IMG/VR virus record: IMGVR_UViG_3300024308_000302
Location: 1 to 64,000 of that record
Strand: one strand, 5' to 3'
DNA: 64,000 bases
In this document: positions 30,516 to 41,292 of the stretch, one piece after another
Layout of the letters: every line of letters starts with the position of its first letter
Numbering within the stretch: position 1 is the stretch's first letter
Program-made: the position numbers and the translations under genes
Notes under the pieces: model-generated
The model's database searches: none
What the model was told of the DNA's origin: nothing
What the model saw: the letters and a program-made list of their open reading frames with translations, nothing else

Positions 30516-30992
30516 TTATTGTTCTACTTTATATACATTGTAAGGCTCACGAATCATGAAGCCACCATGTTTTTTGAAAAATGGAAGGTGTTTAGCTGCA
30601 ACCTTATTACTGGCAATATTGCTTTCATGAGCCAAGTAAATCATATTTTTGTGAAGTTTCAAAAAATGTTCAATGACCAGTCCAGCATAACCCTGACCAC
30701 GTTCTTTTTTTGCAATATAAATCATACCAAGATTTTGATAATCAATATCTTTATCAAGACCCAATTGATTTTTGGTTCTGAAATCAACAGTTGAAGTTCT
30801 AACAATACCAACAATTCGATCATTGTCCTTGATAACTGAGACAGATTCTTTTTCAAGAATACCACGGACTTCCTGAAAAGTTAACCCGGCTGGATTAGAT
30901 ACAGAAGTGTATTTGTTACGCATGGAAAAATAAACCAGTTTTACGACTTCTGGATTTTCCGATGGCTTCTGACAATTTTCAATGGAAATCAT
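30516..30992 (-). CDS. GNAT-family acetyltransferase
   Basis: motif A YIAKKERGQGYA; N.AS motif B. Confidence 0.75.
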   Translation of the reverse strand: MISIENCQKPSENPEVVKLVYFSMRNKYTSVSNPAGLTFQEVRGILEKESVSVIKDNDRIVGIVRTSTVDFRTKNQLGLDKDIDYQNLGMIYIAKKERGQGYAGLVIEHFLKLHKNMIYLAHESNIASNKVAAKHLPFFKKHGGFMIREPYNVYKVEQ

Positions 30993-31839: not shown

Positions 31840-32235
31840 TTATGATTTTTCAAAAACAACAAGTTCTCGTTTTTTTCCTTTCTCATTTCGGACATGTAAC
31901 ATATCGTTCTTAGTATAGAATTCAATTGCCTTAGAGTTGTCTACAGTCGTTTTAAGGCGTATAGGAAGTGGTACAGTATCGAACAATGCTTTGCCAATAC
32001 CTTTACCTTGATGTTCACGCATAACAGCTAATTCATGCACTGTATGCCATCCATCTTGACGTGGATGATAATGAATAAAGCCTAAAACACCATCAACACT
32101 ATCAAAGACCAAAAGAGACTTTTTAGATATAGCTTCAATAAGAGCCACTTTCATTACAAAACCAATAAAATCTCGGTTTTGATTTGCGATTTTTTTGATA
32201 ATGTCTAAATCATCAACAACAGCCAAACGAATCAT
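31840..32235 (-). CDS. GNAT-family acetyltransferase
   Basis: HELAVMREHQGKGIGKAL; N..A..FY.K. Confidence 0.85.
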   Translation of the reverse strand: MIRLAVVDDLDIIKKIANQNRDFIGFVMKVALIEAISKKSLLVFDSVDGVLGFIHYHPRQDGWHTVHELAVMREHQGKGIGKALFDTVPLPIRLKTTVDNSKAIEFYTKNDMLHVRNEKGKKRELVVFEKS

Positions 32236-34251: not shown

Positions 34252-34394
34252 TTTTTAGTCTACTCTCGTCTTGATGTGGTAATTATATAGAAATCCACAT
34301 GGTAGGTCAAGCATATTTTTTAGAAAAAACCATTAATTTTCAATAATTTAAAAACAACAAAACCGCCAGATGGCGGTTCATGGATTAGAAAATT

Positions 34395-34817
34395 TTATTT
34401 TTTGTTATGCAAATCGTAAAGGAAAACCCCAGTAAATTCAATATCCATGCCAATCAAGTCTTTGAATTTATCAGAATCACCAGCAACTGCAGATTTCAGA
34501 AGAGTGATATGAGGAACATGCGGCAAATCTTCAACAATTCCGAAAGATTTGACTGCTTTGTTATAAAAATGACTCCAATCAGTACCTTCAAGTTCAGCAA
34601 CAATCATAACCTGACCGTTTGGATTCCATTCAGAAATCTTAGAAATGCGGCCAGACAAATTGCCATTTTCATTTTTTGGATAATAAGGAAGCTGAATATG
34701 TTTGATAGATCTCGAATGATCAAAAAAAACAGTCAAATGAAGGTTTGATTTAATGTCAAAATTGGAAAGAACAGCACCAGATTCTTTGGTTACTGGAGCA
34801 GCAAAATACATAGCCAT
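34395..34817 (-). CDS. 2H phosphoesterase, T4 gp57B/Acb1-like (candidate anti-CBASS nuclease)
   Basis: HLT and HIT 2H motifs; Y.AA N-terminus and EW...G...V..L pattern as in T4 57B; lies in the tRNA cluster as in T4. Confidence 0.75.
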   Translation of the reverse strand: MAMYFAAPVTKESGAVLSNFDIKSNLHLTVFFDHSRSIKHIQLPYYPKNENGNLSGRISKISEWNPNGQVMIVAELEGTDWSHFYNKAVKSFGIVEDLPHVPHITLLKSAVAGDSDKFKDLIGMDIEFTGVFLYDLHNKK

Positions 34818-34928
34818 AAACTTTTAACTCAAACGATATTTGATAACGCTAATTATACGTTAAATAAAGAAAAAGGACAATTAAAAAATGCTAGAATAGA
34901 AAAAGGCACTCTGAGTGCCTTTGATGGA

Positions 34929-35005
34929 TGGTGGGACTTGTAGGGTTTGAACCTACGACCTAACGATTATGAGTCGTCCGCTCTAACCAACTGAGCTAAA
35001 GTCCC
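34929..35005 (-). tRNA. tRNA-Ile2: tRNA-Ile2(CAT), copy 2
   Basis: cloverleaf with CCA; near-identical to copy 1. Confidence 0.9.
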
Positions 35006-35019
35006 ATTAAACAAGAATT

Positions 35020-35103
35020 TGGTGCCCGGTGCCAGACTCGAACTGGCACGGCTTTCGCCGGAAGATTTTAAGTCTTCTGTGTCTACCATTTCACCAACCG
35101 GGC
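35020..35103 (-). tRNA. tRNA-Leu: tRNA-Leu(TAA), copy 2
   Basis: cloverleaf with CCA. Confidence 0.95.
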
Positions 35104-35108
35104 GTAAA

Positions 35109-35295
35109 TTGAACAGTCCAGAACAGGCTCACATCGAGCAATCTCCGCCCTCCACGGACGGTGTTTTAAGCTTCATCCTTCGACTTTCCCAGTTTATGGC
35201 CACTCAACTGGTTCCATCTAAGACTATGCAACTCTCTAGTCAGCCTGCAGAGCCTTCCTTCAAGTTCCTTTAAACTACCGTTCTGGACTATTCAA
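35109..35295 (-). ncRNA. 187-nt structured RNA of unknown family
   Basis: 18-bp terminal helix and internal hairpins; GC-rich; lies between two tRNAs. Confidence 0.65.
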
Positions 35296-35312
35296 TCAAC
35301 AACAAATAAAGC

Positions 35313-35389
35313 TGGCGTCTGTGGCAGGACTCGAACCTGCGACCATCCGCTTAGAAGGCGGATGCTCTATCCAACTGAGCTACACACGG
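35313..35389 (-). tRNA. tRNA-Arg: tRNA-Arg(TCT) with unpaired acceptor-stem positions 1-3
   Basis: D, anticodon and T arms essentially as in the 36621 copy; 5' CCGTGTG vs 3' CACAGAC. Confidence 0.75.
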
Positions 35390-35399
35390 ATAAAGAAAA

Positions 35400-35477
35400 G
35401 GGTGCTCTTGGTAAGGATTTGAACCTACGACTTGTGGGTTTCCGCCCACAAACTCTACCAGACTGAGTTACAAGAGC
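35400..35477 (-). pseudogene. aberrant tRNA-like element (8-nt anticodon loop GCGGAAAC, bulged T stem, ends ACCC)
   Basis: 7-bp acceptor stem GCTCTTG/CAAGAGC, D arm and TTCAAAT loop intact. Confidence 0.65.
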
Positions 35478-35484
35478 GTGAAGC

Positions 35485-35610
35485 TTATTCTGCGTGACGG
35501 TTGCGGCGTTTATCACGCATTTGACGACTGATTTTGTTATCACTACGTTTGGCGTTATCTTTCGATTTGCCCGAGAATTTTTCCATAGTGTCGCGGTAAG
35601 AACCTTGCAT
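35485..35610 (-). CDS. 41-aa basic peptide, MQGS...RDKRRNRH family
   Basis: not in the ORF track; AAGGA SD; translated by hand. Confidence 0.8.
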   Translation of the reverse strand: MQGSYRDTMEKFSGKSKDNAKRSDNKISRQMRDKRRNRHAE

Positions 35611-35718
35611 TTGGTGTTTCCTTGTATGCTTCGTTTTGATGGGATAAGTATATCAACCATTGAACCCGTTAGCAACCATTTTTTTGAATATTTTTCGCTA
35701 TTTTTTCAAAAATTTAGG

Positions 35719-36060
35719 TCAATAGACAACATTTTTAATCACACCATCCAAACTGACAGATGATTCAGCATATCCACATGATTGAAGCAACCTGTTAACA
35801 TTAGCACGACTAAAGTTTTTTGGGAAACAATAATCTTTCCCTGTAATTAATGATCTTGCAACCCAAGGAAAATACTCACAAACAGAAGCATAAGTTTCAA
35901 CATTGTTAGCAAGTTCAGTGTATGAAGATGGTTTACGAGTTTGAAAAAGAATAACAGGTTCTGGTGGGCCTACAAGCAAGGGGAGATGATATAGAAAAAT
36001 AGGTGTTTCTACTTTTTTAGTAAAAATTTTTTTCATCAAATTAAAAATATTCATATTCAC
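35719..36060 (-). CDS. hypothetical protein
   Basis: ATGA overlap with the upstream ORF. Confidence 0.7.
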   Translation of the reverse strand: MNMNIFNLMKKIFTKKVETPIFLYHLPLLVGPPEPVILFQTRKPSSYTELANNVETYASVCEYFPWVARSLITGKDYCFPKNFSRANVNRLLQSCGYAESSVSLDGVIKNVVY

Positions 36061-36239
36061 CCTCTGAAATCAGTATGCTGATAGCAATAAAGTTGAAAAC
36101 CAGAAAGTTCACGGATAGTTTTGTTTTTTTCTTCAATAGTTTCACGAAGTCTTTTAATTTCGGCTTTCCAGCGAGCATTGTCATCTTCAAGAGATTTAAT
36201 GTATTCTGGGCTTTGATGATAAGGAATATCATTTTTCAT
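36057..36239 (-). CDS. small coiled-coil protein
   Basis: 60-aa ORF with own promoter. Confidence 0.65.
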   Translation of the reverse strand: MKNDIPYHQSPEYIKSLEDDNARWKAEIKRLRETIEEKNKTIRELSGFQLYCYQHTDFRG

Positions 36240-36529: not shown

Positions 36530-36614
36530 TGGTGCCCGGTGCCAGACTCGAACTGGCACGACTTTCGCCGGAAGATTTTAAGTCTTCTGTGTCTACCGAT
36601 TTCACCAACCGGGC
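36530..36614 (-). tRNA. tRNA-Leu: tRNA-Leu(TAA), copy 3
   Basis: cloverleaf with CCA. Confidence 0.95.
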
Positions 36615-36620
36615 ATAATT

Positions 36621-36697
36621 TGGCCCATGCGGCAGGATTCGAACCTGCGACCATCCGCTTAGAAGGCGGATGCTCTATCCAACTGAGCTACGCACGG
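36621..36697 (-). tRNA. tRNA-Arg: tRNA-Arg(TCT)
   Basis: fully paired cloverleaf with CCA. Confidence 0.95.
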
Positions 36698-40689: not shown

Positions 40690-41292
40690 TTAGAGTTTTT
40701 GATTGGTGTCCACATAACCTAAGTAGGCACTAATTTTTTTCTCAACATATTCTTTACTTTGTGTAAAATCATTATGGTGCTCATCACGCTGCATATAGCC
40801 TTTAGGGAATGTCATAGTCACATTCATGCCAAGTGCTTCACCAGCAATACCACCAGCCCAATCAGCACCTGTTTGACCACCTGAGATGAGGTTGGTTATA
40901 GGCCAAAATTCATGGACTTTGGAAATAACAAGATAAACCCACTGGTTCAAAGATGCTTGAGATTCGTTCACAAGTTGCTCTGCATCCAAAGTATTAAATT
41001 TGTTGGGTTGATTATCCTTAGACCATTCACCTGACAAGGAATAGATTCCATTACCAGCCACATTCAAAGTGGAAACATTGTGTTTTTTGCAAGCAGCATA
41101 AAGCATACGAGCAGCCACAAGTGGGTCAGTGCTCAAATGGATAGAAACATAACGTTCACCAGCTTCACGTTTGGTCAAGCGTTCACCGGCTGAAGAAAAG
41201 TCTTCTGCGATAGCGACAGTAAGATCTGCTGTACGAGCATTGTGTACAGTTCGTGGCTTGTACTGTGCAGATTCATGTTCGATAATATGCAT
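40690..41292 (-). CDS. SLOG-superfamily (putative molybdenum carrier-like) protein
   Basis: RT..N...ADLT.A, LNVAGN, ISGGQTGAD.AG motifs. Confidence 0.75.
   Translation of the reverse strand: MHIIEHESAQYKPRTVHNARTADLTVAIAEDFSSAGERLTKREAGERYVSIHLSTDPLVAARMLYAACKKHNVSTLNVAGNGIYSLSGEWSKDNQPNKFNTLDAEQLVNESQASLNQWVYLVISKVHEFWPITNLISGGQTGADWAGGIAGEALGMNVTMTFPKGYMQRDEHHNDFTQSKEYVEKKISAYLGYVDTNQKL

What the first reader, a model, noticed from the sequence alone, without database searches (positions are those of the whole stretch)
35109..35295. 187-nt stem-closed RNA between tRNA-Arg and tRNA-Leu
Seen in sequence: an 18-bp terminal helix (TTGAATAGTCCAGAACGG/CTGTTCTGGACTGTTCAA with two G.U pairs), internal hairpins CCAGTT/AACTGG and CCGTCC-GTGGA-GGGCGG, a twice-occurring GGAA-N3-4-GAAGGA motif and 8 GGA triplets in all. 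It is GC-rich against AT-rich flanks and positioned to be released by tRNA processing. Inference: its size and closing stem recall 6S RNA and the GGA repeats recall RsmY/Z/CsrB sponges, but I could not fit either fold by eye.
Basis: partly seen in the sequence, partly recalled or inferred. Interest (0 to 1): 0.7.

Follow-up and report, generated by a model that had tools for sequence, protein, structure and literature searches.

The report
Orphan stem-closed RNA in phage tRNA operon
A roughly 190-base stretch closed by a 20-base-pair helix sits between two tRNA genes of an uncultivated giant phage-like element and is probably made as a stable non-coding RNA, but it has no relatives anywhere, fits neither 6S RNA nor CsrA-sponge RNAs, and its function is still a guess.

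Summary
The sequence features are real, but they lie on the minus strand, the strand of all ten tRNAs in the window.

**What is there**
- The terminal helix is 20 bp (35297-35278 with 35126-35107). All three non-Watson-Crick positions are G.U on the transcribed strand.
- The element sits 21 nt after a tRNA-Arg(UCU) and 3-5 nt before a tRNA-Leu(UAA).
- It lies inside a compact operon with a sigma-70-like promoter and an intrinsic terminator.
- Its 190-nt window has the lowest folding energy of 4,604 windows in the 290-kb genome.
- Contigs in RNA-type wastewater libraries cover it but not the neighbouring genes.

**What weakens it**
- The interior without the helix folds no better than shuffles (z -0.83).
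- GGA triplets are not enriched (8 against 5.5 +/- 1.6, P = 0.10).
- No Rfam family matches at E <= 10, including 6S, Rsm/Csr, Y RNA and pRNA.
- No homolog turned up in any collection searched, so there is no covariation test.
- Two paralogous tRNA-Arg/Leu pairs lack it, so it is an insertion.

**Verdict**
It is most likely a lineage-specific stable RNA released by tRNA processing, analogous in position to T4 rnaC/rnaD but not homologous to them. The main rival is a functionless insert bounded by inverted repeats. The 6S and Csr readings are not supported.

The parts
35647..35675 (-). Sigma-70-like promoter (TTGCTA-17-TATACT with TG) upstream of the tRNA operon
   Evidence: Consensus scan. This is a consensus match only; function is inferred.
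35485..35610 (-). 41-aa very basic ORF (MQGSYRDTMEKFSGKSKDNAKRSDNKISRQMRDKRRNRHAE), the first cistron of the operon, ending 8 nt before the first tRNA
   Evidence: Translation. The gene is called in the source contig. No Pfam hit.
35401..35477 (-). Non-canonical tRNA with a 6-nt (or 8-nt) anticodon loop and undetermined identity
   Evidence: ARAGORN gives tRNA-?(Ser|Phe)(ga). Rfam tRNA 44.4 bits.
35317..35390 (-). tRNA-Arg(UCU) copy with a weakened acceptor stem: three positions at its base are unpaired relative to the paralogs
   Evidence: Rfam aligns only model positions 4-67. Paralog alignment. ARAGORN fold with mismatches.
35298..35316 (-). AU-rich single-stranded spacer between the tRNA-Arg CCA end and the closing helix; a candidate endonuclease entry site
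   Evidence: Sequence and fold. Contig ends at 35298 and 35299 in two runs.
35278..35297 (-). 5' arm of the 20-bp closing helix
35127..35277 (-). Purine-rich interior (60 % G+A over the whole element), with stops in all three frames. It holds GAAGGA at 35261-35256 and 35181-35176, and hairpins at 35256-35220, 35211-35189 (CCAGUU/AACUGG), 35161-35145 (CCGUCC-GUGGA-GGGCGG) and 35139-35127 (GCUC/GAGC)
   Evidence: The interior alone gives z -0.83.
35107..35126 (-). 3' arm of the closing helix; it ends 3 nt before tRNA-Leu
35020..35103 (-). tRNA-Leu(UAA); its RNase P site would set the element's 3' end
   Evidence: Processing is inferred from general tRNA biology.
34929..35005 (-). tRNA-Met(CAU), the last gene of the operon
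34902..34922 (-). Intrinsic terminator-like hairpin plus U tract that closes the operon

Best explanation
The element is a lineage-specific non-coding RNA gene of about 190-195 nt (35299/35297 to about 35105). It was inserted into the 6-nt spacer of a tRNA-Arg/tRNA-Leu pair in an early tRNA operon of an uncultivated, AT-rich, 290-kb phage-like element.

**Shown**
- It lies on the tRNA strand, between a promoter-like site and a terminator-like site that it shares with four tRNAs.
- It has no terminator of its own.
- Its two ends pair into a 20-bp helix that starts 19-21 nt after tRNA-Arg and stops 3-5 nt before tRNA-Leu.
- It is non-coding.
- Contigs covering it occur in RNA-type libraries that lack the flanking genes.

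**Inferred**
- It is co-transcribed with the tRNAs.
- RNase P cleavage at tRNA-Leu, followed by 3' trimming back to the helix, sets its 3' end.
- An endonuclease cut in the AU-rich spacer after tRNA-Arg sets its 5' end.
- The terminal helix protects it from exonucleases, or is itself cut by RNase III.
- The weakly structured, purine-rich interior (GAAGGA x2, GGAGG, UGGCCA loop) is displayed as a binding surface, so the RNA acts as a decoy or sponge for a host or phage protein or RNA.

The ligand is unknown.
For: **Strand and position**
- tRNA order and strand.
- Operon signals: promoter-like 35675-35647 and terminator 34922-34902, with terminator-like sites 9 found against 2.7 expected.

**Fold**
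- Minus strand -68.5 kcal/mol, z -4.36; plus strand -46 kcal/mol, z -2.91.
- All three non-Watson-Crick pairs of the helix are G.U on the transcribed strand.
- Rank 1 of 4,604 windows by MFE, strand asymmetry in the top 0.65 %, GC in the top 1.2 %. The same scan recovers the genome's SRP RNA, which serves as a positive control.

**Expression**
- Contigs in X25, X26 and X27 (the tool marks X27 'probably DNA'), and in X33 and X12 (library kind not on record), cover the element.
- X25, X33 and X12 show zero depth over all or nearly all of the flanks laid. X26 and X27 show only traces there.
- X6, which holds the whole stretch, covers everything evenly.
- Contig ends fall at 35298 and 35299 in two runs.

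**Variation in close relatives**
- One of the four variant sites changes C85-G107 to U.G, which keeps a hairpin pair.

**Supporting context**
- A second, unrelated stem-closed spacer RNA candidate lies at G000 181054-181331 (z -4.7 to -6.0, strand-specific). It ends 6 nt before the same tRNA-Leu variant.
- T4 places rnaD and rnaC directly after its tRNA-Arg.
- Neighbouring genes look like counter-defence or RNA-repair genes: a 140-aa homolog of T4 57B with both HxT motifs, and an RnlA-like ligase.
Against: - The interior alone folds no better than shuffles (z -0.83), so the whole thermodynamic signal is the terminal inverted repeat.
- No homolog exists in any collection searched. There is therefore no covariation and no evidence of selection on the RNA.
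- Close relatives differ at only 4 sites, a density no lower than in the flanks.
- It is an insertion relative to two paralogous Arg/Leu pairs.
- It sits next to a tRNA-Arg with a damaged acceptor stem and an aberrant tRNA, so the locus could be decaying.
- The RNA evidence is from assembled contigs at depth 2.5-7 in libraries whose RNA nature is only presumed. Contig ends are not mapped RNA ends.
Confidence: 0.5

Rival explanations
1. It is a passenger insertion: an inverted-repeat-bounded DNA segment (MITE-like, or a remnant of a mobile element) that landed in the tRNA-Arg/Leu spacer. It is transcribed only because it sits in an operon. Its terminal repeats fold it out of the way, so tRNA processing still works. 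It has no function of its own.
For: - Two paralogous Arg/Leu pairs have a 6-nt spacer where this copy has 213 nt.
- The 17-20-bp terminal inverted repeats and the 187-191-bp size are typical of MITEs.
- The interior is not significantly structured.
- The adjacent tRNA-Arg and the upstream tRNA are aberrant.
- There are no homologs that would indicate a conserved RNA family.
Against: - It is single-copy in the 290-kb genome.
- Its internal 23-mer occurs once in the 1.54-Mb source contig.
- The terminal-repeat pattern is absent from 185,579 species genomes, and IMG/VR gave only one chance hit, inside a coding sequence.
- There is no convincing target-site duplication.
- All three repeat mismatches are G.U on the transcribed strand (P about 0.125 by chance).
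- It is enriched over its flanks in RNA-type libraries.
Confidence: 0.27
2. It is a processing or insulator module. The 20-bp helix is an RNase III site (as in pre-rRNA stems and T7 early RNA) that separates the upstream aberrant tRNAs from the downstream functional tRNA-Leu/Met, or that tunes their relative yield. The interior is merely a loop.
For: - The helix is a perfect 20-bp duplex with only G.U irregularities, long enough for RNase III by established knowledge.
- The interior is unstructured.
- A second spacer with a long closing stem stands before the same tRNA-Leu variant.
Against: - A 150-nt GC-enriched loop is unnecessary for a cleavage site.
- Paralogous pairs work with a 6-nt spacer.
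- The record carries no RNase III gene, so this would depend on an unknown host.
- There are no cleavage data.
Confidence: 0.1
3. It is a CsrA/RsmA-titrating sponge, as in the first reader's second idea. Single-stranded GGA motifs bind the host's CsrA-family regulator during infection.
For: - There are 8 GGA triplets. Those at element positions 81 and 143 are unpaired, and those at 38 and 118 are partly so.
- AAGGAUG at positions 116-122 resembles the CsrA SELEX core.
- GGA sits in the GUGGA pentaloop.
- The tRNA repertoire (UUA, AGA and AUA decoders) suggests a GC-rich proteobacterial host, where Rsm systems are common. This is an inference.
Against: - GGA is not enriched (P = 0.10).
- No match to CsrB/CsrC/RsmX/Y/Z models at E <= 10.
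- There is no own terminator, and the architecture differs (long closing helix).
- The host is unknown.
Confidence: 0.06
4. It is a 6S-like RNA that sequesters sigma-70 holoenzyme, as in the first reader's first idea.
For: Its size (187 nt against 184 nt for E. coli 6S, from established knowledge) and its long closing stem.
Against: - No hit to any 6S model.
- There is no rod shape, no central bubble flanked by two long helices, and no terminal stem opposite the closing stem. The interior is a set of short independent hairpins.
Confidence: 0.02

Closest known systems
Phage T4 small stable RNAs rnaD (species 2, 119 nt) and rnaC (species 1, 139 nt)
   Same: They are non-coding RNAs embedded in a phage tRNA cluster on the tRNA strand, directly downstream of tRNA-Arg(UCU). 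They are released by tRNA-processing enzymes and their function is still unknown. A 57B-like gene lies nearby in both genomes.
   Different: There is no sequence or structural similarity. rnaC carries a tRNA-like T arm (CCGGGUUCGAAUCCCGG) and an acceptor-like stem. The element has neither. It is longer, it is closed by a 20-bp helix, and it lies between two tRNAs.
6S RNA (Rfam RF00013 and related)
   Same: Similar length and a long terminal helix formed by the 5' and 3' ends.
   Different: No covariance-model match. No central bubble or rod architecture. It is not a free-standing gene.
CsrB/RsmY/RsmZ protein-sponge sRNAs
   Same: A purine-rich RNA with several GGA triplets, some of them unpaired.
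   Different: GGA is not enriched above composition. No model match. No terminator. A long closing helix is present.
MITEs transcribed as hairpins (for example Neisseria Correia elements, ERIC)
   Same: Size of 100-200 bp, terminal inverted repeats of about 20 bp, an intergenic insertion, co-transcription with neighbours, and a potential RNase III substrate.
   Different: It is single-copy everywhere searched, with no target-site duplication.
tRNA-linked ncRNA expression units (plant tRNA-snoRNA genes, MHV68 TMERs, MALAT1-mascRNA)
   Same: An adjacent tRNA or tRNA-like structure recruits RNase P or RNase Z to define an end of a non-tRNA transcript.
   Different: Those are eukaryotic or eukaryote-virus systems. 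This is an analogy of principle only (established knowledge, not tested here).

Membership tests
6S RNA | Match to the Rfam 6S covariance models | tested here: not met
   No hit at E <= 10 on 701 nt or on 213 nt.
6S RNA | Rod-like fold: closing stem, large central bubble, terminal stem | tested here: not met
   The closing stem is present, but the interior is 5-6 short hairpins with z -0.83.
6S RNA | Binds sigma-70 holoenzyme and templates pRNA | not testable with these tools
   Needs biochemistry.
CsrB/RsmY/RsmZ sponges | Match to the Rfam Csr/Rsm models | tested here: not met
   None at E <= 10.
CsrB/RsmY/RsmZ sponges | Over-representation of GGA, mostly in hairpin loops | tested here: not met
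   8 observed against 5.5 +/- 1.6, P = 0.10. Only positions 81 and 143 are fully unpaired.
CsrB/RsmY/RsmZ sponges | Independent gene with its own promoter and a rho-independent terminator | tested here: not met
   No terminator-like site falls within or at the end of the element. The only promoter-like match inside the tRNA array (35094-35065) lies within tRNA-Leu, downstream of the element. The element sits inside a tRNA operon.
CsrB/RsmY/RsmZ sponges | Binds CsrA/RsmA | not testable with these tools
   No csrA gene in the 290-kb record. The host is unknown.
T4-type tRNA-cluster stable RNAs (rnaC/rnaD) | Located in a phage tRNA cluster on the tRNA strand, next to tRNA-Arg | tested here: met
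T4-type tRNA-cluster stable RNAs (rnaC/rnaD) | Sequence or structure homology to rnaC or rnaD | tested here: not met
   The alignment shows no real similarity, and there is no T-arm-like element.
T4-type tRNA-cluster stable RNAs (rnaC/rnaD) | Accumulates as a discrete stable RNA | tested here: inconclusive
   Contigs in RNA-type libraries cover the element without its flanks. Depth is low and ends are not mapped.
MITE / inverted-repeat mobile element | Terminal inverted repeats | tested here: met
   17 nt at 94 % Watson-Crick, or 20 bp with G.U pairs.
MITE / inverted-repeat mobile element | Multiple dispersed copies | tested here: not met
   Single copy in G000. Its internal 23-mer occurs once in the 1.54-Mb contig. 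No copy in GTDB genomes, IMG/VR or GenBank phages.
MITE / inverted-repeat mobile element | Target-site duplication | tested here: inconclusive
   At most an AT dinucleotide, depending on where the ends are drawn.
Y RNA / YrlA | Rfam match, tRNA-like module and an Rsr (TROVE) partner | tested here: not met
   The YrlA hits (E 0.08-0.2) fall on the flanking tRNAs, not on the element. No TROVE gene is present.
tRNA / tmRNA / SRP RNA / RNase P RNA / phi29 pRNA | Covariance-model or ARAGORN match | tested here: not met
   A genuine SRP RNA was found elsewhere in the genome by the same tool.

The most novel reading that the evidence does not exclude
The element is one of several unrelated non-tRNA RNAs that this uncultivated giant phage expresses from its tRNA arrays. 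The others are a second stem-closed RNA at G000 181054-181331, a 4.5S/SRP RNA, tRNAs with aberrant anticodon loops, and amber suppressors. On this reading the element is a new class of host-takeover or counter-defence RNA: a protein or RNA decoy displayed on a nuclease-resistant 20-bp clamp. tRNA arrays would then be a general phage platform for making processed ncRNAs.
Probability: 0.22. Interest if true: 0.72.

Novelty: new variant of a known kind. Interest (0 to 1): 0.42.

Why it matters
Small stable RNAs inside phage tRNA clusters have been known since T4's species 1 and 2 RNAs, and they still have no assigned function. This would be an independent, structurally different example in an uncultivated 290-kb phage-like element. 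That same element carries an SRP RNA, suppressor tRNAs, an Acb1-like gene and an RNA ligase.

If it is real, two things follow. Phages would be using tRNA processing as a general way to mature regulatory or decoy RNAs. And there would be a concrete, short and easily synthesised RNA to test against host proteins and defence systems.

If it is only a tolerated insertion, it shows how an inverted-repeat clamp lets foreign sequence sit harmlessly between tRNAs.

Tried and rejected
**Known RNA families**
- Rfam at gathering thresholds on the window and on all of G000, and at E <= 10 on 701 nt and 213 nt. Only tRNAs and one SRP RNA elsewhere were found.

**Homolog searches**
- blastn against GenBank phages: nothing for the element, only tRNA matches for the wider stretch.
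- Exact and degenerate pattern scans of IMG/VR: the hairpin 17-mer gave four chance hits, and the internal 25-mer gave none. The terminal-repeat pattern gave one chance hit inside a tape-measure-like coding sequence. The tRNA-Arg...tRNA-Leu spacing pattern gave none.
- JGI metagenomes: only the source contig.
- GTDB genomes: nothing, twice.
- Covariance model R1 on G000 and on Ralstonia phage RsoM2USA, the nearest RnlA relative at 40 % identity: only self.

**Finding relatives through proteins**
- The 140-aa neighbour has only 2 clusters in 5.8 billion proteins.
- The 632-aa ORF has no relative in IMG/VR or GenBank phages.
- Using the spurious plus-strand 84-aa ORF as a handle found nothing.
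- A contig from another sample (L013) turned out to be an assembly chimera across tRNA-Leu paralogs.

**Other ideas rejected**
- T4 rnaC/rnaD homology.
- A coding reading: stops in all minus-strand frames, and the plus-strand ORF is antisense to tRNA-Leu with no database relative.
- Stop-codon recoding of the genome.
- Partner genes in G000 (TROVE/Rsr, CsrA, RNase III): absent.

- The 1.54-Mb source contig outside G000 could not be searched.
- The complex-prediction job was not run. Composition-preserving RNA shuffles would keep several GGA sites, so it could not have discriminated CsrA binding.

Full report
**1. The observation**

All ten tRNA genes in the window are on the minus strand (ARAGORN; Rfam), so that is the relevant strand.

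The order on that strand is:
- an aberrant tRNA (35477-35401);
- tRNA-Arg(UCU) (35390-35317);
- a 19-21-nt AU-rich spacer;
- the element;
- 3-5 nt;
- tRNA-Leu(UAA) (35103-35020);
- tRNA-Met (35005-34929).

The minus-strand RNA folds at -68.5 kcal/mol (z -4.36 against dinucleotide shuffles). With two more flanking bases on each side, the helix reaches 20 bp. The plus strand folds much less well (-46 kcal/mol, z -2.91), because all three non-Watson-Crick positions of the helix are G.U on the minus strand.

**2. Is it more than chance?**

I folded 4,604 windows of 190 nt across the whole 290-kb record.
- The window on the element has the lowest energy of all.
- It has the second-strongest GC-corrected residual.
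- Its strand asymmetry is in the top 0.65 %.
- Its GC content is in the top 1.2 % (0.476 against a mean of 0.32).
- The same scan picks up a bona fide SRP RNA, which serves as a positive control.
- Among inverted repeats with distant arms in the 64-kb window, this is the only one of at least 17 nt with at least 90 % complementarity.

- The eight GGA triplets compare with 5.5 +/- 1.6 in shuffles (P = 0.10). Only two or three are clearly unpaired.
- The 151-nt interior, folded without the closing helix, gives -39 kcal/mol and z -0.83.

The thermodynamic signal is therefore essentially the terminal helix.

**3. Context**

The window is the first 64 kb of a 290,157-bp IMG/VR record classed as a provirus (CheckV completeness 96 %). 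That record lies at about 268-558 kb of a 1.54-Mb JGI subsurface-metagenome contig.

The record has these properties:
- 35 tRNA genes, all on one strand and heavily biased to A/U-ending codons: ten Leu-UAA, four Arg-UCU and six CAU, plus two CUA amber suppressors.
- A standard genetic code.
- A T4 RnlA-like RNA ligase, HNH endonucleases and a transposase-like gene.
- Very many ORFs with no PHROG match.
- No Gp23 or Terminase_6N Pfam hit.

Whether it is a complete phage, a prophage or part of something larger therefore stays open.

Around the element the signals define a compact unit:
- A promoter-like site at 35675-35647.
- A 41-aa very basic ORF.
- The four tRNAs with the element between the second and the third.
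- A terminator-like hairpin at 34922-34902.

A new promoter-like site then precedes a 140-aa ORF. That ORF aligns with T4 gene 57B across both HxT motifs (PHROG 755 at E 2e-4; pairwise E 0.003). From established knowledge, 57B is the anti-CBASS phosphodiesterase Acb1. The assignment here is tentative.

**4. Expression**

The index of public runs lists the 1.8-kb stretch in many DNA runs from subsurface, freshwater, soil, plant, silage and food samples. RNA-type wastewater libraries hold only 5-14 % of its words. When only the element was queried, three such libraries held 61-72 % of its words.

Laying their contigs gave this picture:
- In X25, X26 and X27 (the tool marks X27 'probably DNA'), contigs of 151-241 nt cover the element. 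X25 has zero depth over 34300-34909 and 35398-36100. X26 and X27 have only traces there.
- X33 has zero depth, and X12 almost none, over the flanks laid (34800-34907 and 35394-35600). X6, which holds the whole stretch, covers everything evenly.
- Two contigs end at 35298 and 35299, 1-2 nt outside the helix. One ends at 35105.

This is what a stable RNA would give. However, depths are low (2.5-7), these are assembled contigs and not reads, and contig ends are not RNA ends. I rate accumulation as a discrete RNA at about 0.7.

**5. Relatives and covariation**

None could be found.
- blastn against 50,697 phage records gave no match.
- Pattern scans of IMG/VR gave chance hits or nothing.
- JGI metagenomes returned only the source contig.
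- 185,579 species genomes gave nothing, twice.
- A covariance model built on the element matched only itself in the genome and nothing in the nearest identifiable phage.
- The neighbouring proteins are equally orphan.

Close relatives seen in public runs differ at four positions:
- 35133 A>G, in a hairpin loop.
- 35141 A>G, in an unpaired linker.
- 35211 G>A, which turns C85-G107 into U.G and keeps the pair.
- 35194 T>A, which breaks the loop-closing pair of the same hairpin.

This density is no lower than in the flanks, so nothing can be said about selection.

**6. Origin**

The genome has two other tRNA-Arg(UCU)/tRNA-Leu(UAA) pairs with nearly identical tRNAs and a 6-nt spacer (36530-36697 and G000 169309-169476). 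Aligned to them, the element plus its 5' spacer is a clean insertion of about 205 nt after the CCA end of tRNA-Arg.

In this copy the tRNA-Arg also has three unpaired positions at the base of its acceptor stem. Rfam aligns only model positions 4-67, and ARAGORN needs a shifted, mismatched stem. The tRNA upstream has a 6-nt anticodon loop.

An insertion bounded by inverted repeats suggests a MITE. Against that, the element is single-copy everywhere, its terminal-repeat pattern is absent from all genome collections, and it lacks a clear target-site duplication.

**7. What it is not**
- No Rfam family matches at E <= 10: not 6S, CsrB/C, RsmX/Y/Z, YrlA, pRNA, SRP, RNase P, tmRNA, a group I intron or a ribozyme.
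- The fold is not the 6S rod with a central bubble.
- T4 rnaC and rnaD occupy the equivalent place after T4's tRNA-Arg, but they share no sequence or fold with the element. rnaC has a tRNA-like T arm and the element has none.
- It is non-coding on the transcribed strand. The plus-strand 84-aa ORF is antisense to tRNA-Leu and has no relative among 5.8 billion proteins.
- The record encodes no Rsr/TROVE, CsrA or RNase III.

**8. Most likely mechanism**

I commit to a lineage-specific stable non-coding RNA that is matured by the tRNA-processing machinery (confidence 0.5).
- *Shown:* strand, position, shared operon signals, the helix, its non-coding nature, and the element-only coverage in RNA-type libraries.
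- *Inferred:* RNase P cleavage at tRNA-Leu leaves a 3-5-nt tail that is trimmed back to the helix. An endonuclease cuts the AU-rich spacer after tRNA-Arg. The 20-bp clamp protects the ends, or is cut by RNase III. The open, purine-rich interior (GAAGGA twice, GGAGG, a UGGCCA loop) binds a protein or an RNA.

A second, unrelated spacer (G000 181054-181331, 278 nt) supports the idea that this genome uses tRNA arrays to make other RNAs. It has z -4.7 to -6.0 on the tRNA strand and -1.9 on the other. It is also closed by a long stem that ends 6 nt before the same tRNA-Leu variant.

The rivals are:
- a functionless tolerated insertion (0.27);
- an RNase III processing or insulator module (0.10);
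- a CsrA sponge (0.06);
- a 6S mimic (0.02).

**9. Verdict**

This is a real and unusual sequence feature that is plausibly expressed. By position it is a new variant of the T4-type 'stable RNA in a tRNA cluster'. It has no family, no covariation support and no assignable ligand. Interest is moderate (0.42). It would rise sharply if end-mapped RNA, a partner or diverged homologs were found.

Noticed in passing
G000 183334-183429, minus strand (= L040 6835-6930); outside the 64-kb window: The record carries a 4.5S/SRP RNA. It matches Rfam RF00169 Bacteria_small_SRP at 58.7 bits (gathering score 40), E about 1e-10, with an intact domain IV motif GUCAGGACCGGAAGGUAGCAGC. It lies about 95 nt downstream of a tRNA-Arg(UCU). 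A full-text search found no mention of SRP RNA in the main huge-phage survey.
   Followed up: partly
G000 181054-181331, minus strand (= L040 4555-4832): A second stem-closed structured RNA candidate (278 nt) lies between two tRNA-Leu(UAA) genes. It folds at -81.2 kcal/mol, with z -4.7 to -6.0 on the tRNA strand and -1.9 on the other. It has no Rfam hit and no similarity to the finding. It ends 6 nt before the same tRNA-Leu variant.
   Followed up: partly
window 35401-35477, minus strand: A tRNA with a non-canonical anticodon arm: a 6-bp stem with the 6-nt loop CGGAAA, or a 5-bp stem with an 8-nt loop. ARAGORN cannot name it.
   Followed up: partly
window 35317-35390, minus strand: This tRNA-Arg(UCU) copy has GAC where its two paralogs have UGG at acceptor positions 70-72, so three base pairs are lost. 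Pair 6-67 changed in a compensatory way, from C-G to U-A.
   Followed up: partly
G000 179840-179914 and 180849-180923, minus strand: Two tRNAs with anticodon CUA (amber suppressors, which ARAGORN labels 'Pyl'). ORF-length statistics nevertheless give no sign of TAG or TGA recoding.
   Followed up: partly
window 34395-34817, minus strand: A 140-aa ORF immediately downstream of the tRNA operon resembles T4 gene 57B (Acb1, a 2H phosphodiesterase). Both HxT motifs align (LHLTV and PHITL). PHROG 755 scores E 2e-4 and the pairwise comparison E 0.003. There is no Pfam or PDB sequence hit.
   Followed up: partly
window 35485-35610, minus strand: A 41-aa, strongly basic ORF with a Shine-Dalgarno sequence is the first cistron of the tRNA operon. 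It has no family match. It is a possible RNA-binding peptide.
   Followed up: no
whole record G000 and its source contig: The 290-kb 'provirus' lies inside a 1.54-Mb metagenome contig, and the index lists two contigs of more than 1 Mb that carry its genes. Almost all genes are on one strand. Of 25 ORFs of about 360 aa or more tested, 21 have no PHROG match. No Gp23 or Terminase_6N hit was found. The nature of the replicon is unclear.
   Followed up: partly
window 40690-41292, 31840-32235 and 30516-30992 (minus strand); G000 66183-67316: Accessory genes near the tRNA arrays: a circularly permuted YpsA/SLOG protein, two GNAT acetyltransferases and a T4 RnlA-like RNA ligase.
   Followed up: no
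L013 (ENA contig k141_428512): This contig joins the sequence upstream of the tRNA-Leu at G000 168895 to the sequence downstream of the tRNA-Leu at 35020. The join creates an A.A mismatch in the acceptor stem, so it is most likely an assembly chimera across tRNA paralogs and not a variant lacking the element.
   Followed up: yes
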